DNA of 64,000 nucleotides. Origin: Sphyrna mokarran. Lineage: Eukaryota. Made by a program: the position numbers and the translations under genes. Positions 10,235 to 55,424 of the stretch are shown here, one piece after another. A model generated the notes under the pieces. The model was not told where the DNA came from and did not search any database. It was given only the letters and a program-made list of their open reading frames with translations. Each line of letters begins with the position of its first letter. The stretch's first letter is position 1. Location of the stretch: NCBI GenBank assembly GCA_024679065.1, contig JAGIQG010000004.1, positions 54,374,001-54,438,000 of the forward strand. The letters are read 5' to 3'.

Positions 10235-10500
10235 TCCATATAGTGCCATTCGGCCGACAGAGTCTGCACTCATCACAATCCCACCCAGGTTCTATCACCT
10301 TAAATCCACCTGATCCCCGCTAATCGGCTGACATAAAGGGGTAATTCACTTCACCTACACATCTTTGGAGTGTAGGAGGAAACCAGAGTACCCAGAGGAA
10401 ACCTAAGCCAATGCGGGGAGAATATGAACGTATAAACTCCACATAGATAATTACCCGACTGAACCCGGGTACCTGTCGCTATGAGCGGCGGTGCTGATCA
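10235..10500 (-). mobile_element. HE1-type V-SINE inserted just after the paralog stop codon
   Basis: Reverse-complement core acatctttggagtgtaggaggaaacc..ggaaacc. Confidence 0.7.
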
Positions 10501-10521
10501 CCTAGTTGAGTATCTTTCACC

Positions 10522-10650
10522 TCAATCCGTCAGTCCTGCCTGAGAATAGATGGTGTGCTCCTTCTTGTGTTTCGGTTTGGAAGGGCCCTTTTCTTCTCGC
10601 GGGCTCAGAGTAGCGTAGGCGACAATGTTCTCATCTGGCCTTTGTCTAAC
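10522..10650 (-). pseudogene. Paralog gene 2, terminal ITIM exon (still open)
   Basis: Acceptor ttatttttacag|, VRQRPDENIVAYATLSPREEKGPSKPKHKKEHTIYSQAGLTD*. Collinear with 28622-28750. Confidence 0.8.
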
Positions 10651-11171
10651 CTGTAAAAATAAGACACAAAATATTGAAAGCGGCGAATCTGTCTCTGCAG
10701 CCAGCTACTGTCAATTCTAATTAACTCTGTCAATGTAAATATGCAGACAGTAAATGATAGAACTAGTTTGCAAGAGCACTTTCTCCCTTCTCGACTATTG
10801 TATCCAATATCGAACAATAGAGTGGAGAGTATTTGTTTAATCAGTTCAAGCAATGTTGGCTTCACTGGCTAAGTTAACAGTCGATAATGCAGTTGAAGCG
10901 CTCCAGTCGGGGTCGGGTACGTGCTTCCCTGGTATTTTTAGGGCAGTCCTTCCAGAATTCTGACTCAGCGACAGTGAAGGAACTGCGATATTTTTCCAAG
11001 CCAGTATTTTCAATGGTGTAGAAAGGAACTTCAACGTGGTGTTCCTATATATCTGGCAGCTTTGATATAGGACGAGTTGGTGCTGCTGGAGATCTAGATC
11101 AATCGGAATGAAAAGTAGAACTTTTTCACATAGGCATTCCTGGAAGATAAATGGCAGTGAAGTAAGCATCA

Positions 11172-11365
11172 AGATGAAAACAAAATACTGCAATGCTGGA
11201 ATCTGAAACATAATCAGAAAACGCCGGAAAATCCCATTAGGCCTAACAGCATCTGAGGAGAGTGAATCGAACATTAGCTATATTCTGTTTCCACAGACCT
11301 GCTAAGATTTCCAGCATTTTCTGTTTTTGTCTCAGATTCCAGCAGCCACAGTATTTTACTTTTAG
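11172..11365. repeat. Short palindromic interspersed repeat
   Basis: aaaatactgc..gctggaatctgaaac inverted to tcagattccagc..cagtatttt. Related copies near 38705-38900 and 37030-37070. Confidence 0.65.
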
Positions 11366-14086
11366 CTTTTCGGCCTTATATCCGCTGCCCTTCTCCGTTT
11401 GGATGACAGTGGTCATGAGTTTGCAAGGTGCTGTCTATGAAGTCTTAATGCGTTCCCGCAATGTATCTTGCAGATGGTATACGCTAGTGCCACTGTATGT
11501 CGGTGGTAGAGGAAGTTTTCTTTCTGGGTGGGTTGCCAATCAAACTCCTGCTTTGTCTTGGATGGTGTAGAGCTTCTTGAGTGTTGTGGAACTGCTGTCA
11601 TCCAGGCAAGTGGAAAGTATTCCGCCACATTCCTCACTTGTGCCTTGTAGATTGTGCACCTGCTTTGGGGAGTCAGGAGGTGAGATACTCGCTGCTTGAT
11701 TCTTAGCCTCTAACCTGCTCTTGTAGCTACAATGTTTATGTAAAATCATAATACACATAACAATACAATAACTAGGAACAGGAATAGGCAATTTAGCATC
11801 TTAAACCTGTTCTGCCATTCAATACAATCTAATTTCAGCATCATCTGCACCTTCCTATCCATTCCCCATAACCATTCATCAGAGGGAGCAAGCCTTGTGA
11901 CTCATTGCTAGTTACAGCTTATCAAACAGAAAAAGGCCCATTGTTCTCACTCTCTTTTTTCTGTTGATTAGTGAATCCTCTATCCAACCTAATATATTAC
12001 CCCAACCCCATTTTGCCATCGGTATTAATCTTTTGTGTGACATCTTATCCAATGCATTTTGAAAGTCCAGACATACTATACCTGTAGAATCTCCTGTAAG
12101 AATCTCATCTTTGAAGATTTAGTTAATCATGATTTACTCTTCTTAAAAACTCTGACTGATGGATTGCGTTTTGATTTTCTAAATGTCCCTTTACTACTTC
12201 CTTAATGATGAATTCCAAGAATTTTCCAATGACAGATGTTAAACTAACTGGTTTATAGTTTTCTACTGTTTATATTTCTACATTTTTGAACAGAGGTGTT
12301 ACATTAACCTATTCCCAATCTCCTACAATCCCTACATTTGGAGAAGAAGGCCATTTGGTCCATTGATTTTGCGCCAAGTTTCTGACAGAACATCTTATCC
12401 TGGCCACACCCACTTCTATTCCTGTAACCCCATGTATTTACCATGCTAATCCCCCTAAACTACACATCCTGAGACACCTAGGGACAATGTAGCATGCCTT
12501 ATCCACCTAATCTACTGGAACTTTTCCAGAATCTACGGAATTTTGGAACTTCAAACCAATGCCTCTGCTGTCACTCCCTTTAAGATATAAGTCATCGTAC
12601 TCTGGAGAATTGTCTGCCTTTAATCACAATAGTACACTCAGTACTTTTTCTCTAGTGAAGGCGACTATTTTAAATTCCTCCTTTTGAACTATCCCCGCAT
12701 TACCTGCTAATATTGGTATGGTTTTAGCCTCCTGCACTGTGAAAATCAAAACAGACTATTGATTTAGTGCTATTACCATTTCTGTGTTCCTCATTATTAA
12801 TTCCTCAGTCTCGTCCTCTAAGGAACTAACGTCTTTAGCTACTCTCTTTCTTTTTATGTAGTTACAGAATCTTTTCCTCTCCGTCATATATTTGCACTGG
12901 ATTTGCTGCCATGCAGACATATGGATGGTTTAGTCCAGTTTCTGGCTAATGTTCTAAATATGGAACCCAGAACACTTGATAAATTTACTCGCATTTAAAA
13001 TTGTCACTATCTGGAACTAATAATGATATAATAAATAATGCACATTTTTAATTTCCTAATTACCTCCAACCGTCCCCCCCCCCCACTCATTGGGGCAACC
13101 ATTGTCTTCTTACTGCAACCAGTTGGAAGACTTGACTGATGCCTGAGTTTGTCTTCCTTTCACTTGCAGAAACTTCCATCCCAGGGTGGAAATCAACAGC
13201 CTGGGCCCTGACAAACCCTCACTCCTCACGTCACTCTGCTCTCTCTGCCTCTCCTATCTTGACTTCTATGCGTCACTGTGCACTCTGGAGAGGTTTCAGG
13301 CCATTTAAGCTACCAGCAGGAGTGTTTCAGCCTGGCTTAGCCAATATACCGAAACCTGGGGTCTTCCTTGTCTACCTGTGCGAATAATGTCTATGTTAAG
13401 CACCCGATCATCTGGAAATTTCCTTATTTTGAAATAAATTTAAGTTTCTAAGGAGAAATCAACAGTAGATAACTGTTGCGAAGGTAAATAGTTATCTGGT
13501 TCTTAACATAAAGGAATAGAGTGTAGAAAGAAGCAATACTTTCAAAGTAGCCAGGTCCTCAACTGGAAATCGTGTCCCATTCCGGGACTTGCAATTTGGG
13601 AAGGATGTCAAAATTTGGAGAGGAGATTTACTGGAATGTTCAGTGATGTGAGGGAAACTAAAGAATCTATCATTGTTCTCCTTACAGCAGGGAAAGAATT
13701 CTCTGAGGTTTAGTTCGAGTAAACGAGGCAAAACCGCTACTCTTGGTGATTTTGCTTGCTAACCAGGGGATTCGATTTTGATAATTGGGGAAGATAAGAA
13801 GTTTTCTGCAACTTGCTGTTGTAATCTGCAATGCCCTGACTGACCCAGTAGCGGAAGCATATTGAATAGAAACTTTCAGAATGGGGATTGGAGAAACGTT
13901 TAAAAAAATGTCAGTTGTAGGTAAAGGGTATGGGAGTGGAACTCGCTGGGCACTTAATTCAAAGAGGAAGCACAGCTACTTTCCTTCCATACTATAAAAT
14001 ATTATGGGTATTTTAAAACCAATTGGTATCTTTCCCGCTGAATATAGAATTTCCTTCTCACTACCGCCCCCGTTCATCCTCACCTC

Positions 14087-14163
14087 TCACGCCACGTTTT
14101 TGTAATGTAAAATAAGGCATTGCTCTTCTCTCTGAGCTGCTTCCACGTAATTTCTATGATCGT
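14087..14163 (-). pseudogene. Paralog gene 2, cytoplasmic exon homolog that lost its donor site
   Basis: DDHRNYVEAAQREEQ aligns to GVKRNSVEAGQSDEA. Acceptor intact, no GT at the homologous donor. Reads through to TGA at 14089-14087. Confidence 0.7.
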
Positions 14164-14603
14164 CTAAAAGAAAAAGAAAACATGAGCAATTAAATCAGTG
14201 CACAAGCGAAACCAGTATCATACCTTTGACGCAAAACAAATTTTTTAGAAAGTAAGGGAATTTGAATGCTGAAGTTGTTGAGGAGCATCAACCGCAGTAT
14301 ACTGTACATTACCTTCTCATTATCCGGATTGATCCGTGGTCCACAAGGTCTACTCAAATTTTTGTACAATGGCGCGAAGGATGTGATAGGGAATCGATAA
14401 CACTTTGACAATTTCAAGTTTTCAAAGTCCGCTTTTCGTTGTCATTTTCAAGTCTCAATTACATAACACTCGTGTGATATCAACTTCGTTCTTTAATGAT
14501 TTTGCAAAGTGCTCTTTATTCCTGTACAATGAATTTGTGCTTTTTAAAGCGTAACCGCGCATAAGAAAATAAAAATGTGCAGCGAAATGTTAAAGGTACT
14601 TAC

Positions 14604-14697
14604 CAGCTGATGCCTTTAATTTGAGCCTCGTCAAAATAATTATCAACAGTAAAATAGCCTGCACATCCGAAAATGAACGGAAATTTGACAGCAGTAT
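14604..14697 (-). pseudogene. Paralog gene 2, TM exon with 11-bp frameshifting deletion
   Basis: Aligns to 34023-34130, with intact tag| and |GTAAGT sites. 94 nt vs 108 nt: gcggcgcattg is deleted and there is one codon fewer. Confidence 0.85.
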
Positions 14698-14784
14698 CTA
14701 CAGAAACAAATGATTGAAATAAGAAACCGCGCAACTTATACATAGTCATAACTAGGATGTAGAAAACGATCAACTTAATGCAAG

Positions 14785-23965: not shown

Positions 23966-26900
23966 GAGATGTTAACTTTTATCTGTTTAACACAAAGTAA
24001 TGTTTTCTGCTCATTCCATCTGATTAAGGTGTGTAAATGACCTGACTGCTGCTGGTTTGTGGGTCAGTTCAATTTGTCCCAGTGTCTGCTGAGTATGATT
24101 TAAATTGTGTGAAGTATTTTAATCTTCAGAAAATTGCAATGCTCAGAATCAGTGGGAACTACAGTAAATGCCAGATTGCAGGCCGTCATAAGGCTGTTTG
24201 CAGATCTTAATTTTTTTATATAAAACACATTGAGTCTTAAAACTATAAAGCAATTTAACATGCACTAAAGTATTGAGGATAGCCTAGGCTGTTTTTTTTA
24301 CAAAAAGTTGTAATTCTGAATAGTAATGAACCAAGTGCAGGTCTAGGGGTTTGCGCTTCCAGTTGGTGGGACAGCAGTTCCTTTATTACTAATTTTGTAT
24401 GGGAAACATGCTTCTTAGCAAGAACTCTGGAAGTTAGAATATGAGAATTTTAGAATCATTATTGACTGTAGTAGTTCAATGACCACTGTAACCTTGGTGA
24501 TAAATGAGTCCTTGCCAGCATTATCCGCACTTGAAAATACTATCTTGCCTATCTTCAATCTGTATATCCATTGTATTGCACATCACACTGACAGAATGGA
24601 ATGCCAAAACATCACCTTTAACAGATGTGGGATGCAATTAGTAGTGCTGTCAGTAAGATTGCTGTAACCCTGTTTAATTAAAATGCACTGAAAATGTTGC
24701 AGTTTACACAATGTTTTGCCTTAAAATTGGTTGGTGCCAGGACAGAACTGTAAGGATCGTAAGGTAAGAATGGGTCCATCACTAGTGGGAGTGATTTCAA
24801 AAAAAATTACTTTAGTGTACAGCACTTGACTTTATATAGTCCTGCTGGCATTTGATAAGACTATCACTGGTTTTGCTGTAGCTTTGATAACCTAAAAGAA
24901 ATAAACAATTGGTTATACTTTTTGTGGTTTCACTCTATCTTCATATTCTTGGCCACTGTTTCTTAATACCTTTCCACCCCCAACCACCAAATAAAAATTG
25001 CAAAACTGATCTCCATTTTCAGCAAAGTAGCACTGTGGAATTTCATAATCCGTTTATACAATCCCTCTATACTTCGTTATGCAACCTGACTATGGTTCCT
25101 GTGTCTTCTGAGTTATAGGAAGTAATTGATTTGCAATGTTCATGCACAAGGTTCACAAATGTGTTCAGTCAGCTGGCACATTTTATCACTGCAATGAAAA
25201 CTGCAGTGGGTAGCACTGCTTCTGTGCCAGAGACCTACGTGTGATTCCTGGCATGGGTCACTGTGTGGAGTTTGCACATTCTCACTATGTCTATGTGGGT
25301 TTCTTCCAGATGCTCCGGTTTCCGTTCACACTCCAAAGATGTGCTGGTTAAGTTGGACATGCTAAATTGCCCCACAGTGTCAGGAGGTTAGTAGGGTTAT
25401 GGGATAGGTCCTGGATGGGATTGTGATTGGTCGCCTCCTGCACTGTAGGAATTCTATGACAGCACAGTTGGTGTCTGTTAGCAAAATTGTTTCGTTGACC
25501 CTGTTGGATCTTTGGGTTGATTAATTGAACTGGGAGCAGCACAAAAATGAAGCAATTTTTCTGTAGTTGCTGTCGATAAAGTATTCTGACTAGCCTAGTT
25601 ATGTTTTCTCCTTTTTTAAAAGGTAGGATTATGGTGTTGCAGGCAATAGGCTTATCTGTCCCCCTTTTGAAATTGGATAACTTATTCTTGGGTTCTATTA
25701 AACAGTTTGAATTTTGCGGAATGGTGGTGCACTGAATTTCCCATTATCCTATGCCACGTGGTTGGTGATTACAACATGTTTGTTGTTGCCTGAAACAGAA
25801 CAAATTTTATAAAGGAAACTGTTAAACACAAATATTTATTTTATTAAAGTTGAATTGATTGGCACTTAACGCTCCATAAGGAATCTCCAAATCTGATCTC
25901 AAACCATGGAAATTCAATTTTAAGAACTATCATAAACTGACATTACAACATCTGTATGACTTGGTCGATAGCATTTCAAACTTGAGCAAATTTATAACAT
26001 GCTATCCAAAGAAATAAAATATTTGCAAAGTCTTCTTGGTGTGAAAAAGCATCTGATATTAGGCTTGTTTCATTGGATAAGTGACTAATTCTCCTATTTT
26101 ACAATCTTTGCTTTGTGAATTCTTGCCATTATTATGTACTTTAATTGCAATAAATGAAACTACGTGGTTAATGAACAAATATCAGGAGGCTGTGTGACAC
26201 AGTAGGTATCTGCTTCTGAGGTAGAAGCTCTGGGTTCAAGCCTGACTCCAGGAGTTGCAGGTCAAGAAAGGTTAATCAAGGAAAGTTGCTAAATAAATTG
26301 AGTAACTTGTGAATCCTTAATGTCCACCAACAGTAGACAGTAAGAACAAGAGAAATTTCCATCACATAGTCAGCCATGTGATGGAAATTAACTGAAGCCT
26401 CTACCATCACTACTCACTCGGGGTAGAACATAATAGTGTGTTACTAGAGCAACTGACTCCTTGGACGGTTAAATAGCTGGTGTCTATCAGTCTCATACCA
26501 ATATTTGGATTAACCCTCAGACTGGAGTGGATTGGGACCTGCTTCGTTGCTGTGGGATCAGAGTGCTATCGGTTAGACCCGCCTTCAGGCAGAGCTGAGG
26601 AATCAAATACCTGGAGCTATATCTATTAAAAAGCTCAATGATGAGTTATTTTTAGATTTTCAACTTCTCTCTCTTTGTCACATTTACTTCTGCATACTCT
26701 ACATGTTTGTCTTGATGATTAAATTTTGAGGTTTTCTTGAAGTCAGCGAGCTGCAGAGTGGCGTAAGTCAGCTTGTCATCTCTGCTTTGTTTAGTCTGTG
26801 AAAGCAATATTTAATACCTGTTAAATGGTCCTCATTACTTGAGATAATGAGGTTTTTAAAAAGGCTGCAATGAAGTTTTCTTTCATTTCAAGTCACAGTT

Positions 26901-28507: not shown

Positions 28508-28513
28508 TTTATT
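28508..28513 (-). promoter_or_regulatory. Candidate polyadenylation signal of gene 1
   Basis: AATAAA on the minus strand ~110 nt after the stop codon. Confidence 0.35.
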
Positions 28514-28621: not shown

Positions 28622-28750
28622 CTAGTCCTTCTGCCCTACCTGGGAATAGATGGTCTGCTCTGTCTCGTGTCTCCGTTTGGAGGATCCATTGTCATGTTTC
28701 AAATTTAGACTGGCGTAGGCAACAATTTCCTTATTTGGTCTTTGTTGAAC
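28622..28750 (-). CDS. IgSF receptor gene 1, exon 6: terminal exon with ITIM (VAYASL) and ITSM (TIYSQV)
   Basis: Acceptor ttttttcctctctgcag|, phase 0, VQQRPNKEIVAYASLNLKHDNGSSKRRHETEQTIYSQVGQKD*. Same length and stop position as the paralog exon at 10650. Confidence 0.85.
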   Translation of the reverse strand, partial: VQQRPNKEIVAYASLNLKHDNGSSKRRHETEQTIYSQVGQKD

Positions 28751-29354
28751 CTGCAGAGAGGAAAAAATGGAATATTGATCGAGAGCCATCTATCATTTGG
28801 AACTGAATCTGAGAATTTGTAGGTGGCAACTGATAACACTAGGGTACCATTACACATGAGCCACTGATTTTTATCCAATATTTCACAAATTATTTACCCG
28901 TATTTACAATTGAGATGATCTTGAATATCGCTTCTATGAATAATACAAACAAATCAGCTCCTTCCCTTTCTCAATTATCTCATTTTACTTAATTTTACAT
29001 GTATTTCTGCACATTCCACCCCTCAGTAGAAATCTCCAATTCCACTGCCTGACCCAGAGGTGTAGTGTGCAGAACAATTCAGTCACCTGCAGCCAATCTG
29101 AATCAGCAAAGACAGCAGAGGTGGGGATAAAAGCACATAATGTAAGGAATAGGAGTAAAATTAGGCATTTGACCTATTGGTATGCTCCATCATTTAATTG
29201 GTTAATGGTTGACTTGATTGGGGTCTCAACTCCAATTTCCTGTTTATCCTCTAAGAAGAAATTCCTCATCTTCATCTTTGAGAAATGTGGTGGAGTGGCA
29301 TTTGTTGTCTCACTCCATTTAAATAGTTTAAATGAAATTCTACTGTTCAATACT

Positions 29355-31150
29355 ACATAGAAGATAGGAGGAGGCCATTTGGTCCATGGAGCCTGCTACC
29401 CTGTTCATCAAAATCATAGCGATCGTCCAGTGCAATAGCCTAATTTGCATTCTCCTCCTAAATCTTTAATCTCATTCATCCCAAGTGCGTTATCTAGCCA
29501 CCTCTTGAATACATCATGTTTTGGTACCAACTGATTGCTGTGGTAATGAATTCCACAGACTCATCACTCTTTGGGTGAAGAAATGTCCCCTTACCTTTCT
29601 CCTAAATGGTTTACCCTGAATCCTCAGACTCTGACCCCGATTTTGGATTATCCTCCCCCGCCCACCACCATCAGGAACATCCTCCCTGAGACTATCCTGT
29701 CTAATCCTGCTAGAAGTTTTAAGTCTCTGAGATTCCATCTCCCCATTCATCTGAACTCCAGTGAAAACAATCCTTACCTAGCTAATCTCTCCTCATGCCT
29801 CAGTCCTTATGTGGCATAAATGAAGATGGAGATTAATCATCTCAGCCCTAGTACATCATTGCAGCACTCTCTCAGATTAGTGTCCTAGGCCCAATCACCT
29901 TCAGCTGTTTCATCAATGACACTTACTCAATCAAATATGGGTTTGACTGCACAACGTTCAGCACTATTTGCAACTCCTAACATATTGAAGCAGTCCATGC
30001 ACAAATGTAGCAAGATCCAGACAGCATGCAGGCTTTGACAAGCAAGTGGCAAGTAATATTCATGCTGCACAAGTGCAGATAATGACTATTTCCAACAAGA
30101 GATAGTCTATTGCCCCTTGACCTTTAATGACATTACCGTCACTGAATCCCACACTATCAATATCCATTGACCAGAAACTGAACTGGACCAGCCATCAAAA
30201 TACTGTCACTATTAGAGAAAGATAAAAGTTAAGAATCCTGTGGCAAGTAACTCACTTCCTGATCCCCAAATCCCGTCCACCATCTACAAGCCAAAAGTCA
30301 GGAGTGTGATGCAATACTCTCCATTTGCCTGGATAAATGCAGTTCCAAAAACACTGAAGAATCTGGACGCCATTCAGGACAAAGCAGCCCGATTGATTGT
30401 TTGAGAAAGGGTATCAATCTACAAGATGCATTGCACGTTTACACTGAGGCTCCAAAGGCAGAATCTTCCAAACAACAGCTACTATTGTCCAGAAGGATAA
30501 GGTGAGTTTATACCTGCAAGCACCACCACCTGTAAGTTCCACTCCAAGTTATTTATCATCCTGACTTAGAAATACATGCCAGTCTTTCACTGACCTTTGG
30601 GTCGAAATCCTATGGTTCCTTTGCTGACATCACAGTTGCTGCACTTCAGGGACTGCAGCAGTTCAAGAAGGCAGCTTATCATCACCTTCTCAAGGACAAA
30701 TAGTGATGGTCAGCAAATGGTAGCTTAAAAAAATCATTTATGGGATATAGGTATCGCTGGCTGGCCAGCATTTATTGCCTATCCCTAGATGCCCTTGAGA
30801 TGGTAGTGGTGAGCCACGTTCTTTAATCAGTGTAGTCCATGTGCTGTGGGTTGACCCACAATGCCATAAGGGAGGGAATTCCAGGGTTTTGATCAACCAT
30901 CTGTGAAGGAACAGCAGCAATGTATTTCCAAGTCAGGAATGCCTTGGAGGAGAACTTGTAGGTGGTAGTGCTCCCATGTATCCATTGCCTTTGTCCTTCT
31001 AGGTGGAAGGGGTCGTGGGTTTGGGAAGTGCTGAAAAAGTATCATTGGTGAATTGCTGCAGTGCATCTTGTAGATAGTACACAATGCTGCTACTGATCAT
31101 CAGTGGTGCAGTGAATGGATGTCAAGCTTCTTGAATGTTCTTGGAGCTGT
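29355..31150. mobile_element. LINE fragments in the last intron of gene 1 (CR1 tail, minus; second CR1/L2-type family in both orientations)
   Basis: HFFTQRVMSLWNSLP in the CR1 tail. The second family also occurs at ~3960-4160, 10870-11740, 48240-48430 and 54500-55380. Confidence 0.65.
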
Positions 31151-31739
31151 GCCTATCCGACAGAGTTTTTGTTTATCAACTAGGCCATCTTCAGGGAAAA
31201 AGCCTTTGGTTTTTAATTTAACTGAATCTATGGCAGACACATCTTAGCAATGAGAGAGATAGCAGCTCACTCAGTTCTGCCAGAAACAGGACAGTGAAGT
31301 AACAGGCAAGAATGAAAGTCCCAGAAACTAAAAAAAAAATCAGTTAGTTCTAGAAACCAGAGAATGAAAAGCGAGGTTGCAGGAAACTGAAGTTTTGAGA
31401 ACAAGATTGAAGGAAATTGAATAATTGTATTTATTGAAGTTAAGGACAGAGCTGAGAAGCACAGACTGAGTAATGTTGCTTAGTGAAAAACCAAAGATGT
31501 GAAGTAATCATAGGGTTGGTGATATCTTGTTGCAGCCTGTGAAGCAATAGGTGAAACAATTGTGAAGCAATTGGTCGTTCGATCCTTGAGAGATTGTATG
31601 GTAAACTTGAAAGTGCGTGGCTATTCAAGACAAGTAAGTTATTGAAAGGATAGTTGGAGATCCTGAATTGAATCCTTTCTGGAAACAGTAGAGGGAAAGC
31701 ATTGTTTGAAAGAAGGTTTTAAGGCATGCCTTTTCGAGA

Positions 31740-31966
31740 GTGATGATGTGGAGTTGCCGGCATTGGACAAGGGTAGACACAAGAAGTAGTCTCACAACAC
31801 CAGGTCAAAGTCCGACAGGTTTACTTGGTAGCAGGAGCTGCGGAGCTTTTGGAATACTGTCCCTTCATCAGGAGAGTCTCTTCTGATGAAGGAGCAGCGT
31901 TTTGAAAGCTCATGCTGCAAAATAACTCAGTTGAACTTCAACCTGGTGTTTTGAGACTATTTACTT
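31740..31966. mobile_element. Short palindromic Penelope pseudo-LTR element
   Basis: Inverted arms around ~31876, each with ctgatgaagg...aaagct. Related pieces at 33130-33270, 36340-36485 and 40150-40220. Confidence 0.7.
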
Positions 31967-33405
31967 TCCAAGAGTGGAATCTAAAAACACTCGTGTGAAT
32001 GCTGGAGTCCAGCGATATTAGCTGGCTCACAGCATAATAAGCATCTGGGAGATCTGAGGGAAAAAACATAGAAGCTCAATTGGGTGGCATCTGACACTGG
32101 ATTTCAGAGTGGATATTATCTGGCCGCAGTTAGCCTGCTGCATTACAAGGATTGTGGATTTATTGAGAATATTCTAGCCTAAGATGTGTTTTGCAACCTG
32201 TGTCATCCTTAAGATTTTCTATTGTTAAAAGCTAATTGACAGTCCAGTGACTCAGTTCATCCACGTTTTCTAAAATAAAATGTAAAAGTTACTGTCTTTT
32301 AAGTGAGGGTCATTCTGGGACCTTCCCTTCCAGTAGCAACATCAACTGGGATTTTGACAGAAGGATGCAAGGCTTGGGAGCAGTTGTGGAGAAGATTTAT
32401 TAGAATCGTACTGGGGAGACAAGAGAACCTATTATTGTTGTCTTCACAACAGAGAAAGAAAAAGTATATTCAAAATTGGGAGAGATTTTGACGAGTAAAT
32501 AAGGAGAGAGTGTTTTCAATCGTGGTTGATTGAATGTCCAAGAGACAGAGACTTCGGATCACCAAAATCATTAAAGGTAGATGAGTGTTGCTCTCTGGAA
32601 TACGCTTCCTGAAAACCTGGGAGGGGGGTTGACTGGGAGTTGTTCATTCGCTTGAATAAACAAAAACGAAGGATCATATGTAATGAGTGGGGAATTGGGC
32701 TACTTGAATAATTATCTCAACTAAGTGGCGCAGAGAGAATAGCCTCCTTTCGGGGCTGCTCCTTATTTCTTTCGATGCACTTCCCTTCTACACTCCTAAT
32801 CTTCACCCATGAAGAGGTGGGTGGACAGGGAGAAGGGGGAGAACCACCTCCTGAACGTGGCCAAGTTGGCTGTTAAGATGTCCAGGTAGCCAGCAGTTGA
32901 GTTGGTCGTCTGCCGCTTCACTGCGGCTACGTTCATAGAAAGCTGGATTTGTAAAGGGAGCAGGCTATGTCTACTGACACATTTCAGGTCGATGGGCGCC
33001 ACGGGGGCAGGGGGTGCATGTTTGCGCCCTGGTACTGACATTATGGTTCAGTTCATTAAGTTCCTTTGCCATTTGCTTTAGTTACAATGTCTCATCCGGC
33101 ATTATTATCCTCTGTCCTTTTGATTAACACGGTAAGAAGTTCACAACACCAGGTTAAAGTCCAACAGGTTTATTTGTAGCAAACGCCACTAGCTTTCGGA
33201 ACTGGCTGTTCCTTCGTCGGATGGCTGCGAGTTCAACCCCAGTCCAACGCCGATATCTTCACATCATGACTTTTGATTAATATCAACCATTCATTCTTTC
33301 ATAAGATTAAAAAAATGAATTAATTACTTATTGGATTGATTGAAATATTTATTTCTATTCTCCCTATTCTCTCTTTTTGGAGTATAAAAAACATCATCTT
33401 CTTAC

Positions 33406-33449
33406 CGCCTCATCGCTCTGACCGGCTTCCACGGAATTTCTTTTAACGC
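33406..33449 (-). CDS. IgSF receptor gene 1, exon 5: short cytoplasmic exon (GVKRNSVEAGQSDEA)
   Basis: Acceptor ttctttcctctag|, donor |GTAAGA, 44 nt, phase 1-0. A homologous exon is present in the paralog at 14163. Confidence 0.8.
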
Positions 33450-34022
33450 CTAGAGGAAAGAAGAAATTAAGCTTGAGTAAATTTCTGAATGTAAGCAAAA
33501 TCATCAACAAGCTTTCCATTCTGAACACTTTTACTACCAAAAGAAAGGAGCCTTGAAAATCGAGACATTCCATTGTGATGTTTCCCCCAGTGGAGAACAC
33601 TGCCTTTAGCGTGATAATAATAAACATGTGATGAGAGAGTCGCTAAATTGCAATCGAAATACGACCAGAGGAAGACGTAAACAGTCCATATCATTGCCAT
33701 TTTACATTGTCGCGGGAAATGACTTAAGAATGTTTGCGCTACAAGGTCCTAATATTTTTAAAAATGCGGGACGTTAAGAAGGTGTACAAATTAATTACAG
33801 TTCGAATGAGAAAATTGAACATTTGCATTTCAAAATTGATTTGCGTTGCCATATTCAACTCGCAATCACATAACGCTCTTGAGGCATCAACTTCGTTCTT
33901 TAAAGATGCAGCAGGCTCTATATTTCCTTTAATGAAACACTATTCACCCGCTGTTTATATCTTAACACTTTGACTAGGCATAACAAAATAAAAGTTTGCG
34001 GTGAAATAAGAAAACTTCTTAC

Positions 34023-34130
34023 CAGCTGAAGCTTTTAATTTGAATCTCGTCAAAATAATTATCAACAGTACAACAGCCAATGCGCCGCCTGCACATCCCA
34101 AAATGAGCGAAAACTGGATTTCTGAATTAG
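34023..34130 (-). CDS. IgSF receptor gene 1, exon 4: transmembrane
   Basis: Acceptor gatcttgtag|, donor G|GTAAGA, 108 nt, phase 1-1. FSLILGCAGGALAVVLLIIILT followed by basic RFKLK. No charged TM residue. Confidence 0.9.
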
Positions 34131-34829
34131 CTACAAGATCAACATATGATTGAAATAAGAAACTGTAGAATACAGAAAAATTTATGCACACAATCTTGGG
34201 TCTAGCACGGGAGGGCGCGGTGCAAAGTTATCTTTCCTGAAATTGTGTCCATTTACCTTGTGTGGGAGCCGACACTTTTATTTCTATAGGCAGTCGCTAT
34301 AAAATGATTATAACGTGATCCAAACAACAATAACACAATTTAATTTTTAATCTATAAAGGCGCAGGAAATTTCTCTCCAGAAGTGGGGGCTTTTCGATCA
34401 GAGTAAAGAGGCTTATATTTGTGCCACACCAGACAGACGCGCATTGGCTACAAAGAATAGCAAAGTTTTTCATTCTTCGGCATTGACAACCCAGAGAACA
34501 CCTACTGCAGCTCTTAGTAGGTAACAAGAACAGCTTGCATTTGACATTCCGAAATACCCAAATGGAGCGTTATCAAATACAATCAAATCACATAAATAAT
34601 ATTATGACAGCTGGAGGTAGAGTTGAGGGAGCGTCGAAAATGAGAGTTGGAAAGACGGGGATACTCAGAGCGAAAGTTGGATTCAGACAGCAGGAGACAT
34701 TATGCGGAGATAACGATTTTATCTTACATCCAAATCTAATATTTAGGATATAAAAGCGACTACTAAAACTGATCATTTTTATGTGCATTTCACTTGGCAA
34801 GAATTTGACGAGGAATAAGCACATTAGCC

Positions 34830-35270
34830 ATAGAACCATAGAAAAGTTAAAGCACAGAAGGAAGCCACTCGGCTCATCTTGTCCATACCAGCTCGTGGAC
34901 ACGAGGTGCTCTTTCTAATCTCACCTTCCTGCGTTCCGGCCCATAAGGTGCAGATGCAGGTACTTAAAAAGAAGAGTTTAGGGTGTCTGCCTCCACCAAT
35001 TCAGGCAGCGAATTCCAGGCACCCATCTCCTTTTGTGTCTTCTCTACACCTTCTGCCACTTACTTTAAATCTATGACCCCTGTTTCTAGAATTCTCCGTC
35101 AAGGGAAACAATTTTATCCTGTCCATTCTATCTCTTCCCCTCATAATTGTGTACACCTCTGTCAGGCCCCTTCTCAGGCTTTTTTCCAATGAAAATAATC
35201 TCATCTATCCAATCTCCATTCCAACACTTTTCTAGCCCCGGCAATCTCCCGTTTCAGGAGAATGTTCTCC
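34830..35270 (-). mobile_element. CR1 3' fragment in the C1-TM intron
   Basis: ORF 35001-35204 LFSLEK..RGHRFKV. Confidence 0.75.
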
Positions 35271-35455
35271 ATCCTCCAGCTACAAATTATCTTAATTATT
35301 TTAATTCGTTAACATTGATGTGACATTGAGATTAAATAAAATCCACAATTTTCCTGTAAATTCGAGTTTGAACAGCTGCCCAGCTACATTAATAATAAAT
35401 AATACAAACCGGAGTCTTTACCCCCATTCGTTTCTGTAAATGTTTGGAATCTTAC

Positions 35456-35752
35456 CTTGATTGACAGTGCAGTTGACGCTCGCGGGCATCTTAAGGGAGA
35501 TATGAGATGCCAGACATGTATAAACGACTCTGTTCTGGAGAGGTCGTGCTTCTTTGAAAGAACTGGTGACCTCAAAAAGACCATCCACTGCCTCATTTCT
35601 CACAGTTTGTATTCCGGCCAGAATTTCCACACCATCTCTGCGCCAGGAGATGTTTAAACCCTCCGGGTAAAATGCAGCCGTTTTGCACTTGAATTTTAGA
35701 GAAGTCGCTGAATTCTCTTCAATCCGAACGATTTTCAGTGGTGTTGGAGGAA
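35456..35752 (-). CDS. IgSF receptor gene 1, exon 3: C1-set Ig domain
   Basis: Acceptor cccctgttaaaag|, donor G|GTAAGA, 297 nt, phase 1-1. C1 hallmarks CxxxxFYP..ISW..DG, DGLFEVTSS, YTCxxxHxSL. Confidence 0.95.
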
Positions 35753-35817
35753 CTTTTAACAGGGGAAAAATCATTTTTGAATTGAAAAGAGTAAATTCTC
35801 TATTGCCGAACCTCGAC

Positions 35818-36091
35818 TAAAGACACAACGTTTAGTGCTACAATGATTCTTACAGAAAAACCCGAGTAGAACCCAATATTCGTGCTGACTGGTTGGTGCT
35901 CCCTGTGATACATTCGGACCGGAATCTGAATGGAGGTCACTGCTGCCGAACACAATCCCGCGCCAGGATCTGCTGCTTTAATTCCGTAAGAAGTCTCACA
36001 ACACCAGGTTAAAGCCAAACAGGTTTATTTATTTGGCAAATAATCATTTATTTAGCAATATATGTTGGACTTTAACCTGTTTTTTTTTGTG
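35818..36091. repeat. Inverted copy of intron segment ~36385-36655
   Basis: Reverse-complement match, for example cgtgctgactggttggtgctccctgt vs acagggagcaccaaccagtcagcacg. Confidence 0.9.
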
Positions 36092-36206
36092 AAGTCGCTG
36101 AATTCTTGTCAATCCGAACGATTTTTAGTGGTGTTGGAGGAACTTTTAACAGGGGGAAAAATCAGTTTTGAATTGAAAAGAATAAATTCTCAATTGCTAA
36201 ACCTTG
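36092..36206 (-). repeat. Partial duplicate of the C1 exon start and its splice acceptor
   Basis: Near-copy of ~35702-35817, with AG at 36144-36143. Confidence 0.9.
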
Positions 36207-37584
36207 ATATCCTTTTATACTCGTACTGTGATAACAGTTATCATGCTGTCGCATTTTTTTAAACTTCGGGCGGATCATTCTCTCAGAAATGATTACAATC
36301 AGGGAGGAAAGTGTCACTGCTCGGAATTAAAGCCGTGATGTCGAGATGCCGGCGTTGGACTGGGGTAAACACAGTAAAAAGTCTCACAAAACCAGGTAAA
36401 AGTCAAACAGGTTTATTTGCCAAATAAATGAATATTTGCCAAATAAACCTGTTGGGCTTTAACGTGATGTTGTGAGACTTCTGACAGCATTAAAGCAGCA
36501 GATCCTGGCGCGGGATTGTATTTGGCAGCAGCGACCTCCATTCAGATTCCGGTCCGAATATATCAGACAGGGAGCACCAACCAGTCAGCACGACAATTCG
36601 GTTGCACTCGGGTTTTTCTGGAAGAATAATTGTGATATTAAACATTGTGTGTTTGTTTGAAAAATGACCCACTTCAAATATTTAATGTTTCCAAACGTAT
36701 TTTGTTTTCCTGATTAATATTAAGATGCGTGAAATCAAAATACCTCCGATAACTAAATTGACTTCAGACAAGATGTAGTTATATGTATCGATTAAAACCT
36801 ATGAGTTACCACTGATTACACAACATTTCAATGCCCATGGTTGAGGTTTCAGATCGTGCATCTTTCACCAGATCATTTTTTTGGGGTCAGGATGCGAATG
36901 TTGGAGTATTTTGCAAACCAGGATAATTTTTGATAATTATATATCGATTTGCAGATGACAATACTCAGGGATTAATTCCAGAGATAAAAACAGGCCATGT
37001 TGATTAAACTCAGCTGGTTTGACTGAGTTTTCATTTCAGATTTCCAGCATCCGCAGTATTTTGCTTTTATTTGACTGGGTCGTTTGCCCTTCTGCAATTT
37101 TACTCGATCTGCTGAACACATTTTGTCTGGAGAAGATTCTGCTTCGAACAGTCCAAAGTTACAATTTTCTGATGTGAACCGCTCTATCTGTCTGTCCACG
37201 CTAAAGTCTTCTACCTCAACTTCCTTCTGTTCATAGGGACTGTACACAGAAGTAACGAATTACATATACCACGTTTATAGAAATGTTCCATGGCATCCAT
37301 TCCCCTCTTTACCAGTTGTGTGTTCATCATAGAACGCCCAGTTTTGAACCCCAAAGGTTCAAACAAGGGCATCGGGCACTTTAACTGTCCTGAAAAGTCC
37401 TGGACCCGGGTTTGGAATCCAGCATTGAGGGAAAGATCAAACCTTCCTTCTTAGTGAATTGTAGGATTCCATTGTGGAAATACTTTGGAATTTCAAACCA
37501 GTTACAAATGGACACAACTACAACATATAAACAGGAACAGGGGCCCATTCAGCCCGACCCATTGTAATCTGCCAACCTTGGTGA

Positions 37585-37870
37585 TAGTGATCAGTACTGC
37601 TGCCTCACGACGTTCGGGAGCCGGGTTCAATTCCGGCCTCAGGTCGATGTGAGTTTGCACGTTCTCCCCTTGTTTGGGTGGGTTTCCTCCCAATGCTCCG
37701 GTTTCCTCCCACAATCCAAAGATGTGCTGATTAGATGAATTGGCCATGCTAAATCGCCCCTTAATGTTAGGTGGTTTAGCAGGGTAAACACACAGGGTTA
37801 GGGGGATGGGGCCTAGATACGATTGTTGTCGGTGCAGGTTCAATGGGCCAAATACTGTAGGTATTCTATG
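37585..37870 (+). mobile_element. HE1-type V-SINE in the V-C1 intron
   Basis: ggttcaattcc B-box and V-SINE core. Confidence 0.8.
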
Positions 37871-39059
37871 ATCCAGCCTGATCTCTAACCTAACTCCATT
37901 TGTCCGACTTAATTTATTCTTAGCTAAAATCAAACCGTCGCAAATTTTAGGCAATGACATAAAGGAAGTGTTACATCGACAATTTCGAGCAGTGGGCAGA
38001 AAAGGAATCTGATTTCGGAAGTACTTGTTACTATACTCGGGGAATTTTCACCTGTATTTATCATGAAGGCTGTAAGAGAGAGTGTCAGAAAAGATTTGTT
38101 GGAGATTTAACAGGGTCAAGGGACTTCGGTTATGTGCAGAGACTGAAGAAGCTATGGTGGCTCTCTTTAGACCTGGTAGTTTTAAGAGGAGGCCAATTTT
38201 AATAAAGTCAGTAAGCAAAACCCGTTCTCAGTGACACAAGAGTCGGCATCAGAATGTGTTTGGGAAAAAGAACGCAAGGATTGTGATCTTTGAGTGGAAT
38301 GAAATTACAACCAAATCCCTGTTATTGTTGCCATGTTGTTCAGCGTAAATCGCGAGTAGTGAATGTAGGGATCCGATCGATTTTCGCTTCCTGGTGAAAT
38401 CAACTAACTCGCAAGAGAGCGCATTTCGAAACGGCCCTCAACAAACCGCTCTTACTTTCCTCGACATCTTCTTCTTGCAATCGCCTTTGCGGGGAAAGGG
38501 GCCTGGGGGGAGGGGGTGATGTGTTATTTCGTGCAGTTCTCGCGCAGACGGCGCCAATATTCCTTCCTCTTTGATGTAAATTAAATGATCTTTGAAGTTT
38601 TGTAAAAGATTTGAGCTGGGAGGTGTTAAGATTGCTTCCATTGTTCAATTGTGACGCCATTGTGGCAAGAAAGAGCCAGACCCTGACATTTCATTACAAC
38701 ATCAATGCAAAATACAGCAAAAGCTGGGCATTTGAAATACAAACGGAAAATATCGAGAATGTCCAGAGGTCGGGCAACAATTGTGTAGAGAAACTGAGTT
38801 AACGTTTCGTATCATTTTATCATCGACATGAGAGGTTAACTTTGTTTCTCTCCACAGAGAGAGCTGATCTGTTGAGATTATTTTGTATATTTCTATTGCA
38901 TAATTTCAAAATGAAACTATCCACTATGCATCGAGGTCAGTGGAAGACAATCCGGTGTTCTCTAAAAATAATTCGTTAAAACCAGCTTTTCCTCCAGAGA
39001 TAAAAAAAATTGCATATATAGCGCCGAGCTGAAATCCTCCCGTTTACAATCACACCTAC

Positions 39060-39365
39060 CGTACACAGTAAGCTGGGTGCCAGTTCCAGTTTCATTAGAT
39101 TTTTCTGGATATTTTACTTTACAATAATACACTCCGGAATCTGCAAAAGTTACATTCAGCAATTCAAGCGAACTACTTCCCTTGTTCGCATCAAATCGCT
39201 TTCTATTGTCTGGTTCGAGAAAGGATTTCTCTCCGCGTCTCCACCAACGAACATCGGGTACATCTTGAGATATGGGAAATTTGCAGAACATGGAAGCATT
39301 CTCGCCTCTGCTCACCTTCAAGTATTTAGGGAACTGAATCACTTCGTTCCGAGTTACTCCGGTGG
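39060..39365 (-). CDS. IgSF receptor gene 1, exon 2: V-set domain with germline-fused J-like segment
   Basis: Acceptor ttcctttcctgacag|, donor G|GTAGGT, 306 nt, phase 1-1. VIQFP..GENASMFC..RWW..LELLNV..DSGVYYC..TGTGTQLTV. Confidence 0.95.
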
Positions 39366-39553
39366 CTGTCAGGAAAGGAACAAAGGCGGTGATGTAACAG
39401 ATGAAGAAAAATAACTGAGAAAAATAAATTATAAAAACAAGCAATCGAATTAGAGAAACACAATATCCAATTTTACAGTGGGTAACAGCTGTATAGACTT
39501 TTAAATTATGACCTACTATTGTAAAATCGGCAGGATGTAATAACGAAATGTAC

Positions 39554-39602
39554 CTGGCCAAAACAGAAGAGCCATGTAGTGAACTGTAACTTGTATCGAC
39601 AT
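39554..39602 (-). CDS. IgSF receptor gene 1, exon 1 (leader MSIQVTVHYMALLFWP)
   Basis: ATG at 39602, 16 codons + 1 nt, donor G|GTACAT. Phase 1 matches the V exon. Hydrophobic core. Confidence 0.8.
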
Positions 39603-40157
39603 GTTGCATTTCGTTGGCTACTTATTGCAAATGACAATGCTATCTACGATAGTTTGCTAAGTAATAAATTCCATCGTTAAATATAGGAAACGTGAAACAA
39701 TGACATGAAACATCAGATGATTGAAACAGCGTATTGTGTTAGTTTACATCGGGGAGAGGGAGGGAGGAGGAAGACCGCGGTAGAAGCTGACCTCCGAACT
39801 ACCGCCGAAAGGTTATCACTTAAAGATCAATTTTTTGCAGCCATTTTCGGAACACTTTGTTCGCGATTTTCTTTGGTAATATCAGACTTTGATTCTTCAC
39901 TTAATTCTGAAAATGATGATGTCCGCTGAGGGCGGCCTTCCAGCACTTCATCTGAGATATTCTTCTTCCTGTAGAAGCACAAAGTCTGCAAATATTTAGA
40001 CATGAGCACTTTGAACTGGGTGCGATCGGACCTCAAGCAATCTCCAACCATCTGACTTGTAGCAGAATCACTGGAATAACCATTCAGATTAACAGTCTTA
40101 GTTATTAACTTGCACTTTATTTTAGTTATATTATGTACTCATATTCGTTGCACTCCA

Positions 40158-54737: not shown

Positions 54738-55424
54738 ATCATTGCTGAGTTTCAAGGGCTGTACCCTGGCGTAATATCCCCTTCTCCCTGCTATCACCAC
54801 TAAGTCAATCCCCAACTCTAATTATTGTGGATTGTTATTGACAAGAATACTAATTGACTCAGCCTTGCAAATACTGTGATTACATGAACAGGTGAGAGGC
54901 TGGGAATTCTGTGGCAAATAACTCACCACCTGACATCTCAAATCTTATGTATTATCTACTATACACAACTTAATAGTATGAAGGAGCTTGGCTGAATGAA
55001 TGTGATTCCAGAGGCTGGACACTATCAAGGAAAAAGAACAAAAACATCTACACAATGCAAAGGGACAATTCACCAAGTCTGCACGGACATCACAATCAAT
55101 TCTAAACCCTACACCTAGACCATCTGGAGAAGAACAGCAGCAAATATATGGGAATTCCAGACCTGTACGTTCCTTTCTGAGTGACACGACATCTTGACCC
55201 GAGACCACATCACCATTCCGTCTCTGTCCCTGGCTAAACTCCTGGAACACCCTCCCATCATTACTCCTGGAACACCCTTCAGGTGTTCCTTCATCATATG
55301 GACTACAATGATTTAAGAAACAGCTCACTATTATCTTCTCAAGGGAAATTAGGGATGGATAATTAATGCCTGTTTTGCCATATCCCTTGAACCAGTAAAA
55401 TTTGTGAGGCAACCTGAACATTTT
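54738..55424 (+). repeat. ~685-bp segment duplicated almost identically at 57728-58415
   Basis: Identical ORF translations (55115-55297 = 58106-58288). Only a few differences, near the ends. Confidence 0.95.

What the first reader, a model, noticed from the sequence alone, without database searches (positions are those of the whole stretch)
28622..39602. Complete non-rearranging VJ-C1 inhibitory receptor gene hidden among repeats
Six exons with canonical GT/AG sites and consistent phases (1,1,1,1,0) splice to an uninterrupted 933-nt CDS (310 aa): leader, VJ, C1, TM, cytoplasmic, ITIM+ITSM. The ORF track never assembles it, and the leader and last exon are not shown in their coding frames. C1-set domains are mostly restricted to Ig/TCR/MHC/tapasin/SIRP/B7H6-type proteins. 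A single germline VJ plus a single C1 mimics a TCR or light chain, but here it is wired to inhibitory motifs. Inference: a shark SIRP/NKp30/VJ-C1-like family member relevant to antigen-receptor origins, possibly uncharacterised.
Basis: partly seen in the sequence, partly recalled or inferred. Interest (0 to 1): 0.9.

Follow-up and report, generated by a model that had tools for sequence, protein, structure and literature searches.

The report
Shark SIRP-like VJ-C1 inhibitory receptor gene

Summary
The exons are real. On the minus strand I confirmed leader, VJ, C1, TM, a 44-nt exon and a tyrosine-motif exon, all with GT/AG sites and the stated phases. Pfam calls V-set (4.5e-14) and C1-set (4.9e-6).

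The model is not complete. The sixth exon has a donor (CAG|GTAGGG) straight after TIYSQ. A seventh exon lies at 26795-26652, outside the finding. It matches the terminal exon of relatives and adds LTYATL and VEYAEV. The likely product is 352 aa with four tyrosines, not 310 aa.

The gene is not a lone oddity. Its C1 exon finds a family of leader-VJ-C1-TM-tail proteins across sharks, rays and chimaeras. These are RefSeq models, most often auto-named SIRP-alpha-like and less often B7H6-like. Some members have ITIM tails and some have a charged TM with a short tail, so they look like paired receptors.

First-stage notes of this scan list similar genes on other DNA of this genome.

No RNA run was listed. 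I found no paper on the family in the held library.

The parts
39554..39602 (-). Exon 1: ATG and leader (MSIQVTVHYMALLFWP + 1 nt), donor CAG|GTACAT
   Evidence: tblastn of P0170/P0171 leaders (MSIRVTAQYMALL) hits 39602-39552 only weakly (E 0.18-0.37), but at the expected place.
39060..39365 (-). Exon 2: V domain with J-like G strand (GTGTQLTV) in one exon, phase 1 to 1. Acceptor CCTGACAG|, donor ACG|GTAGGT.
   Evidence: Pfam V-set 4.5e-14. 78% identical to S. canicula P0003, E 3e-52. All family-invariant residues are present: G20 C27 W40 D75 Y79 C81 G93.
35456..35752 (-). Exon 3: single C1-set domain (CKTAAFYPEGLNISW ... YTCLASH), phase 1 to 1
   Evidence: Pfam C1-set 4.9e-6, 27.2 bits against a cut-off of 21. 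PDB best single-domain match is the human B7-H6 C domain, 6e-7. 346 library hits at E<=1e-3. Family-invariant residues are present: P2 P4 L5 C22 T24 P29 W36 C79 H83.
34023..34130 (-). Exon 4: stalk + uncharged TM (FSLILGCAGGALAVVLLIIIL) + stop-transfer TRFKLK, phase 1 to 1
   Evidence: tblastn P0154 3e-9, P0168 2e-8.
33406..33449 (-). Exon 5: 44-nt cytoplasmic exon (VKRNSVEAGQSDEA), phase 1 to 0
   Evidence: Best of 6 candidates. The peptide matches the same position in P0154 and P0170. A decayed copy sits at 14155-14112 behind the same pyrimidine tract and AG.
28640..28750 (-). Exon 6: first tyrosine pair (VAYASL, 23 residues on TIYSQ), ends at donor CAG|GTAGGG, phase 0
   Evidence: tblastn P0154 8e-10. 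Relatives continue ...TVYAQ|TKQ... at this point.
28622..28639 (-). Read-through of the exon-6 donor (VGQKD + TAG).
   Evidence: AATAAA at 28513, 109 nt after the TAG.
26652..26795 (-). This is the second tyrosine pair, again 23 residues apart.
   Evidence: tblastn P0032 1e-11, P0154 1.2e-8, P0176 8e-8, P0168 1.7e-6. Acceptor TTTCACAG|ACT in phase 0.
25840..26145 (-). Candidate poly(A) signals for the long form: ATTAAA at 26145 and AATAAA at 25845
   Evidence: pattern scan only.
36077..36142 (-). 66-nt copy of the C1 exon's 5' end with its acceptor, part of a ~390-nt tandem duplication. It is open in phase 1 and ends CAG|GTTAAA.
9092..14698 (-). Decayed 3' half of a paralogue: TM' 14698-14605 (14 nt shorter, frame broken), e5' 14155-14112 (donor lost), e6' 10650-10540 (donor GC), e7' 9238-9092 (acceptor AA, in-frame stop, Tyr to Asn)
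   Evidence: No V or C1 copy was found for it.

Best explanation
This is an intact, germline-joined VJ-C1 receptor gene on the minus strand. It belongs to a multigene family found throughout cartilaginous fishes that resembles the SIRP family of bony vertebrates. The gene most likely has seven coding exons (1059 nt, 352 aa): signal peptide, one V domain whose G strand carries a J-like GxGTxLxV, one C1-set domain, an uncharged transmembrane helix, and a tail made of two homologous cassettes. Each cassette holds two tyrosines 23 residues apart (VAYASL...TIYSQT; LTYATL...VEYAEV). Shown here: the exons, their phases, the domain types, homology to family members and the family's spread. Inferred: the V domain binds a cell-surface or pathogen ligand; Src-family kinases phosphorylate the ITIM tyrosines; tandem-SH2 phosphatases (SHP-1/SHP-2 type) dock on them and damp activation, as in SIRP-alpha. 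Family members with Arg or Lys in the TM and short tails would be the activating partners through a DAP12-like adaptor.
For: Pfam gives V-set and C1-set above cut-off. The relic paralogue's e7' has lost its AG, gained a stop and lost a Tyr, while this gene's e7 keeps all three. For the family: the C1 exon gives 346 hits at E<=1e-3, and all 14 proteins fetched from the top 150 showed leader-VJ-C1. All 30 clusters looked up carry chondrichthyan sources except one teleost IgD, one unnamed Logan protein and one unnamed ENA protein. 18 of 47 profile hits are named SIRP-alpha-like or SIRP-beta-like, 7 B7H6-like and 5 tapasin-related-like. Among non-antibody chains, SIRP-alpha ectodomain 2wng is the best two-domain PDB match of the family profile (6.7e-26). 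SIRP-alpha and SIRP-beta V domains align over the full V exon (2.4e-5). The nearest named Atlas clusters of close relative P0154 are 'PTPNS1-like' and 'Signal regulatory protein alpha' (0.96, 205 of 256 features). On pairing: of 85 one-V-one-C1 family proteins, 35 have ITIM-type tails and 15 have a charged TM with a tail under 60 aa. This gene's V is sister (SH-aLRT 99) to a S. canicula member with Arg in its TM.
Against: There is no transcript evidence: no RNA run was listed, so no junction is observed, including e6-e7. SIRPs have two C1 domains and this gene has one. The best single-domain PDB match of the C1 exon is B7-H6, not SIRP. The family profile scores Ig lambda chains almost as well as SIRP-alpha. 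Names in RefSeq are automatic and inconsistent. The tail search found only Heterodontus proteins (5 hits among 48 candidates), and the Atlas tail search gave no usable hit. The tail's likeness to SIRP-alpha therefore rests on motif pattern and my recall. TIYSQT is not a canonical ITIM or ITSM.
Confidence: 0.7

Rival explanations
1. The reader's six-exon, 310-aa product (ending VGQKD, with ITIM + ITSM) is the main product, made by polyadenylation in the intron after exon 6. Exon 7 would be an unused leftover.
For: The read-through frame is open to a TAG at 28622 and an AATAAA lies 109 nt further on. Some annotated relatives are truncated early, such as P0170, which ends after the exon-5 equivalent.
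Against: The donor CAG|GTAGGG sits exactly where relatives splice (...TVYAQ|TKQ...). Exon 7 keeps a canonical acceptor, an open frame of 47 codons and both tyrosines, unlike the decayed copy at 9238-9092. Relatives with the same e6+e7 layout exist: P0032, P0176 and P0174.
Confidence: 0.2
2. The gene is a B7H6 (NCR3LG1) homologue. In that case it is a ligand for NKp30-type receptors rather than a SIRP-like receptor.
For: The C1 exon's best single-domain PDB match is the human B7-H6 C domain (6yjp_C, 32.8 bits, domain E 6e-7). 7 of 47 family hits are auto-named NCR3LG1-like. B7-H6 is also V-C1-TM with a tyrosine-motif tail (recalled). A 2012 paper, not held here, reports B7H6 in sharks (title seen in reference lists; content recalled).
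Against: B7-H6 is not among the 60 best PDB matches of the V exon or of the family profile, where SIRP-alpha ranks sixth. The Atlas nearest named clusters are SIRP-alpha. The paired charged-TM members fit a receptor family better than a ligand.
Confidence: 0.15
3. The gene looks intact but is silent or dying, as a member of a birth-and-death cluster.
For: A decayed paralogue half lies 14-20 kb downstream in the same window. LINE fragments fill the introns and flanks. An out-of-frame ATG lies 7 nt before the start codon. A decoy acceptor sits 390 nt before the C1 exon. No RNA run was listed.
Against: All seven exons are open and all splice sites are canonical. Every family-invariant residue is kept.
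Confidence: 0.12
4. The gene is a surviving relative of the pre-RAG antigen-receptor precursor (like UrIg/UrIg2) rather than a SIRP-type receptor.
For: It has the VJ-C1 layout in germline-joined form. UrIg2 (9dmx) is the top whole-chain PDB hit of the C1 exon (7.5e-13) and second for the family profile (4e-32).
Against: Those UrIg2 scores are sums over three C domains, and the best single UrIg2 domain reaches only 22.7 bits. UrIg2 is V-C1-C2-C3 and forms Fc-like dimers (abstract), whereas this gene has one C1, a TM and ITIMs. Nothing here ties it to the Ig/TCR or MHC regions.
Confidence: 0.05

Closest known systems
SIRP family (SIRP-alpha / PTPNS1, SIRP-beta, SIRP-gamma) of bony vertebrates
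   Same: Both have an N-terminal V domain with a J-like G strand followed by C1-set domain(s), a single TM and a tail with several ITIM-type tyrosines. Both families also hold members with a basic TM residue and a short tail, i.e. paired receptors (review passages). The four-tyrosine, two-pair layout of SIRP-alpha's tail is recalled, not tested.
   Different: This gene has one C1 domain where SIRPs have two. It shows no detectable one-to-one orthology. The second tyrosine motif is TxYxxT. The ligand is unknown, and CD47 binding and synteny are untested.
B7-H6 (NCR3LG1), ligand of NKp30
   Same: Both have a V + C1 ectodomain and a TM. The B7-H6 C domain is the closest single solved C1 domain. 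Some relatives are auto-named NCR3LG1-like.
   Different: The V domain and the whole-ectodomain profile do not rank B7-H6 among the best 60. The family includes charged-TM members.
Predicted RefSeq relatives: S. canicula XP_038662025/24 (P0003/P0151), XP models P0170/P0171; H. francisci XP_067906043 (P0154)
   Same: They share the exon-by-exon architecture. V is 77-78% identical and C1 72% identical to P0003, C1 is 76% identical to P0170, and TM, e5, e6 and e7 match P0154.
   Different: The nearest V relative (P0003) has an Arg-bearing TM and a 15-aa tail. P0154 has one extra tail cassette. None is close enough to be this gene's own product, and none is characterised.
UrIg / UrIg2 (non-rearranging shark VJ-C genes; Flajnik et al. 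2023, 2025)
   Same: Both are germline-joined V(J) plus C1-type domains in elasmobranchs (abstract and passages).
   Different: UrIg2 is V-C1-C2-C3 and forms antibody-like dimers, and it is linked to the Ig/TCR cluster. This gene is V-C1-TM-ITIM and belongs to a large family.
Ig light chains and TCR chains
   Same: They share the V-J-C1 domain order. Lambda chains score 1e-24 to 1e-22 against the family profile.
   Different: Here V and J are one exon with no break. The TM is uncharged, the tail has ITIMs, and there is no sign of rearrangement.

Membership tests
SIRP family | [quoted passage not shown] | tested here: met
   Pfam V-set 4.5e-14. SIRP-alpha/beta D1 align over residues 7-100 of the 101-aa V exon, E 2.4e-5 to 4.6e-5.
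SIRP family | [quoted passage not shown] | tested here: not met
   There is one C1 exon between the V and TM exons. The only other C1-like piece is a 20-aa partial copy. The 85 family proteins used for the census and trees were selected for having exactly one C1.
SIRP family | Inhibitory member with ITIMs in the tail that recruit SHP-1/SHP-2 | tested here: inconclusive
   Motifs are present: VAYASL, LTYATL and VEYAEV fit [ILVS]xYxx[ILV] (consensus recalled), while TIYSQT does not. Phosphatase binding cannot be tested here.
SIRP family | Paired activating members with a basic TM residue and short tail | tested here: met
   Met at family level: 15 of 85 proteins have a charged residue in the TM and a tail under 60 aa, and 35 of 85 have ITIM-type tails. 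This gene itself is the inhibitory type.
SIRP family | Orthology or synteny with the SIRP locus; CD47 binding | not tested
No SIRP sequences were available as stored proteins for a tree. Binding is not testable with these tools.
B7-H6 (NCR3LG1) | V + C1 ectodomain with sequence likeness to B7-H6 in both domains | tested here: inconclusive
   For C1, B7-H6 is the best single-domain PDB match. For V and for the whole profile, B7-H6 is absent from the best 60.
Rearranging antigen receptors (Ig/TCR) | Separate V and J segments joined by RAG | tested here: not met
   V framework and the J-like GTGTQLTV lie in one uninterrupted 306-nt exon.
UrIg / UrIg2 | VJ domain followed by several C domains, antibody-like dimer | tested here: not met
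   There is one C1, then TM and a tail. The UrIg2 match is a sum over three C domains.
C1-set Ig domain | Pfam PF07654 above the gathering score; CxxxxFYPxxhxhxW and YxCxxxH hallmarks (hallmarks recalled) | tested here: met
   27.2 bits against a cut-off of 21. CKTAAFYPEGLNISW and YTCLASH are present.
Chondrichthyan VJ-C1-TM family (unnamed; RefSeq 'PTPNS1-like' etc.) | Leader, VJ with WW(K/R)xGE and GxGxxLxV, VPPTPLK-led C1, GCAGG-type TM, tyrosine cassettes | tested here: met
   All family-invariant residues are kept. The gene sits inside a starred clade (SH-aLRT 98) in the C1 tree, and its V groups with S. canicula P0003 (99).

The most novel reading that the evidence does not exclude
The gene belongs to a large, chondrichthyan-wide system of paired inhibitory and activating VJ-C1 receptors that has no description in the literature I could search. 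This system may be the cartilaginous-fish co-orthologue of SIRPs in an ancestral one-C1 form. That would make it a living sample of the non-rearranging VJ-C1-TM receptors from which both SIRPs and the rearranging antigen receptors are thought to descend. It may also act as the sharks' polygenic self/non-self receptor set, as KIR and LILR do in mammals.
Probability: 0.15. Interest if true: 0.75.

Novelty: new member of a known kind. Interest (0 to 1): 0.4.

Why it matters
C1-set domains outside Ig, TCR and MHC are few, and germline-joined VJ-C1 genes are the raw material in current models of antigen-receptor origin (passages of PMC10751288; abstract of PMC12227049). A family of such genes with inhibitory and activating members, spread over sharks, rays and chimaeras, would place SIRP-type paired receptors at the base of jawed vertebrates. 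It would also give comparative immunologists a large, easily cloned set for ligand hunting. This single gene adds little beyond that. Its value lies in a corrected seven-exon model, and it points to a family that public pipelines name inconsistently.

Tried and rejected
RNA evidence: the look-up of sequencing runs (kind rna, 33900-39650) listed no run. Its cap is one, so read laying was never called and no junction could be checked.

Tail homology to SIRP-alpha: the search for homologous proteins on the tail of P0154 gave 5 Heterodontus proteins among 48 candidates. The Atlas search on the tail of P0032 gave no usable hit. Both searches are word- or cluster-limited, so they say nothing either way.

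Outgroups for a tree: 11 lower-ranked hits were fetched. By my reading of the sequences they were MHC class I, tapasin-like multi-C1, Ig constant repeats and an IgM-like chain, not SIRP or B7H6. No rooted test of SIRP against B7H6 was therefore possible.

A second V or C1 for the relic paralogue: none was found by tblastn or by a Cys-Trp-YxC pattern scan.

An alternative charged-TM exon in this gene: the TM-and-tail parts of P0003 and P0171 gave no hit at E<=1.

Literature: searches (badly chosen terms, useless) found no paper on this family in the held library. Flajnik et al. 2012 (PMC3709836), Ohta and Flajnik 2015 (PMC4594805) and Flajnik et al. 2023 (PMC10530332) are not held. The 2012 paper may already call some of these genes shark B7H6. 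I did not ask for supplementary files. Gene tables in the supplements of PMC10751288 and PMC12227049 could list such genes.

Rejected readings: a chance ORF chain (homology in every exon), a rearranging V (single VJ exon), and UrIg-type (one C1 plus TM).

Full report
WHAT IS THERE. The window has no N and about 40% G+C. The finding lies on the minus strand. Reading that strand, placing the borders and recomputing lengths, phases and flanks gave these exons:
- e1, 39602-39554: 49 nt, MSIQVTVHYMALLFWP, donor CAG|GTACAT.
- e2, 39365-39060: 306 nt.
- e3, 35752-35456: 297 nt.
- e4, 34130-34023: 108 nt.
- e5, 33449-33406: 44 nt.
- e6, from 28750.

Read to the TAG at 28622, the sum is 933 nt. Of six open AG...GT candidates of 44 nt between e4 and e6, only 33449-33406 has a strong pyrimidine tract and a GTAAGA donor. 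Its peptide matches the same position in relatives.

DOMAINS. Pfam gives V-set at 4.5e-14 for e2 and C1-set at 4.9e-6 for e3. Both are above the curated cut-offs. Pfam finds nothing for e4 and e6. The V exon ends in GTGTQLTV, a J-like G strand, within the same exon, so the gene does not rearrange. The C1 exon has CKTAAFYPEGLNISW and YTCLASH. e4 encodes an uncharged helix, FSLILGCAGGALAVVLLIIIL, followed by TRFKLK.

In the PDB, the V exon's full-length single-domain matches include amphioxus VJ-C2 (2.5e-6), SIRP-alpha/beta D1 (2.4e-5 to 4.6e-5) and TCR alpha. The higher-ranked ROBO, DCC and titin hits are sums over several weak I-set matches. The C1 exon's best single-domain match is the C domain of human B7-H6 (32.8 bits). 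UrIg2 tops the list only by summing three C domains.

THE SEVENTH EXON. tblastn of ten natural relatives against the window hit all six exons. Reading it shows an acceptor TTTCACAG|ACT in phase 0. The exon encodes TKQSRDDKLTYATLQLADFKKTSKFNHQDKHVEYAEVNVTKREKLKI and ends in TAA.

e6 has a phase-0 donor, TCC CAG|GTAGGG, directly after TIYSQ. That is where relatives run ...TVYAQ|TKQ.... The likely gene therefore has seven coding exons, 1059 nt and 352 codons. Its tail holds two homologous cassettes, each with two tyrosines 23 residues apart.

The valine that made TIYSQV an ITSM is the donor's GTA. An AATAAA 109 nt after the read-through stop leaves room for a short isoform. ATTAAA and AATAAA signals follow exon 7 at 507 and 807 nt. 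I could not decide between the two forms because no RNA run was listed.

THE FAMILY. The C1 exon, scored against 1.84 billion representatives, gave 346 hits at E<=1e-3 and 114 at E<=1e-10. Many of the best 150 are proteins of 250-400 aa with the match at about residues 122-218. All 14 that I fetched showed leader, VJ and a VPPTPLK-led C1. Most of them also have a TM and a tail.

I looked up names for 30 proteins: 29 of the 150 hits plus P0201. All came from cartilaginous fishes except one teleost IgD, one unnamed Logan protein and one unnamed ENA protein. The species were Scyliorhinus canicula and S. torazame, Heterodontus francisci, Heptranchias perlo, Narcine, two Mobula species, Hemitrygon, Leucoraja, Amblyraja, Mustelus asterias, Cetorhinus, Carcharodon, Chiloscyllium and Callorhinchus milii. 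add Hypanus, Pristis and Hemiscyllium.

A search with the Heterodontus relative P0154 gave 31 of 31 chondrichthyan hits. A profile of 29 members gave 47 hits. Of these, 45 are named chondrichthyan proteins, one is unnamed ENA and one is from Latimeria at 2e-10. Neither list marked a protein as encoded by this window.

The automatic names scatter among those 47 hits: 15 SIRP-alpha-like, 3 SIRP-beta-like, 7 B7H6-like, 5 tapasin-related-like, 2 TCR-beta-like, 2 Ig-lambda-like and 13 uncharacterised.

Within each species the members sit on one large contig, which suggests clusters. First-stage notes of this scan list many similar genes near this window and on other pieces of this genome. I did not test those notes.

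PLACE IN THE FAMILY. I took 85 of the 203 stored proteins: those under 520 aa with one V and one C1 match of at least 80% coverage. I built quick trees from them. The C1 exon falls in a starred clade of 24 rows (SH-aLRT 98), next to S. canicula P0170, P0171 and P0003, with a best identity of 76%. The V exon groups with P0003/P0151 (SH-aLRT 99, 77%). Holding the same 24 rows together on the V tree is not rejected (p-AU 0.30). No stored protein is close enough to be this gene's own product or a clear orthologue.

A census of the 85 proteins used the best 19-aa hydrophobic window and a motif regex. It found 35 with ITIM-type tails, 15 with a charged TM residue and a tail under 60 aa, 16 without a TM and 19 others. 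The nearest V relative is of the Arg-TM type. This is the pattern of paired receptors.

WHAT IT IS LIKE. Against the PDB, the family profile scores the SIRP-alpha ectodomain at 6.7e-26. That is the best non-antibody two-domain match. Lambda light chains score 1e-24 to 1e-22, UrIg2 scores 4e-32 over three stretches, and B7-H6 is not in the best 60. By language-model features, the nearest named Atlas clusters of P0154 are 'PTPNS1-like' and 'Signal regulatory protein alpha' (0.96, 205 of 256 features; a lead only).

A review of SIRPs gives the family's features: V plus two C1 domains, ITIMs recruiting SHP-1/2, and a SIRP-beta form with a basic TM residue and DAP12 (passages). A second paper lists SIRP among the joined-VJ IgSF members (passage). 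This gene meets the V, ITIM-motif and pairing features and fails the two-C1 feature. Orthology is untested.

I therefore file it as SIRP-like in working and as a member of an unnamed chondrichthyan family, not as a SIRP.

MECHANISM (inferred). I expect ligand binding by the V domain, phosphorylation of VAYASL, LTYATL and VEYAEV, docking of tandem-SH2 phosphatases, and inhibition of the cell. Arg/Lys-TM relatives would signal the opposite way through an adaptor.

SURROUNDINGS. The 3' half of a paralogue lies at 14698-9092. It is decayed in four ways: a frameshifting 14-nt loss in the TM exon, a lost donor, a GC donor, and a terminal exon with a lost AG, an in-frame stop and Tyr to Asn. Its nucleotide identity to the live exons is 77 of 94, 30 of 36, 80 of 111 and 99 of 132 aligned positions. 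The contrast speaks for constraint on this gene's exon 7. LINE reverse-transcriptase ORFs and SINE-like repeats fill the rest of the window.

LITERATURE. I saw the abstract, outline and passages of PMC12227049. I saw passages of PMC10751288, PMC12975943 and PMC11599192, and a reference-list passage of PMC3964593. Searches found no paper on this family in the held library. Three key papers are not held. One of them, on B7H6 and NKp30 evolution, may already name shark members. What I say of its content is recalled.

VERDICT. This is a real, intact gene.

Noticed in passing
window 36077-36142 (-), within the tandem duplication 35694-35816 / 36084-36207: A 66-nt copy of the C1 exon's 5' end keeps its acceptor, stays open in phase 1 and ends CAG|GTTAAA. 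It could be a frame-keeping 22-codon cassette. If read on instead, it stops after 22 codons and would give a V-only product.
   Followed up: partly
window 9092-14698 (-): This is the decayed 3' half (TM, e5, e6, e7) of a paralogue with no V or C1 exon found upstream of it. LINE fragments lie between it and the live gene.
   Followed up: partly
window 39609 (-): An ATG lies 7 nt upstream of the leader ATG in another frame. Spliced, it stops after 31 codons, like an overlapping upstream ORF. Unspliced, it runs 215 codons through intron 1 into the V exon. S. canicula isoform X1 (P0151) starts inside the equivalent intron.
   Followed up: partly
window 31782-31826, 33131-33175, 35986-36030, 36374-36418: Four copies of a 45-nt SINE-like core (CACAACACCAGGTTAAAGTC...) lie in the introns. 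I did not identify them.
   Followed up: no
window 19814-20923 (+), 44575-45018 (-), 58395-58778 (+), 54945-55421 and 57936-58475 (-): The first three are ORFs that look like LINE reverse-transcriptase fragments to me; I did not run Pfam on them. The last two are a pair of near-identical 158-aa and 179-aa ORFs of unknown kind, about 3 kb apart.
   Followed up: no
proteins P0002, P0005, P0006, P0007 (names): Shark and ray RefSeq models of 980-1428 aa show 6-11 C1-like matches each. They are named 'titin-like' or uncharacterised. They may be fused models of tandem family genes or a separate multi-C1 family.
   Followed up: no
family proteins P0003, P0171, P0026, P0172, P0083/P0087: Family members with Arg or Lys in the TM and short tails sit next to ITIM-tailed members in the C1 tree. 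For example, P0083 (ITIM tail) and P0087 (Lys TM) are sisters at SH-aLRT 99.
   Followed up: partly
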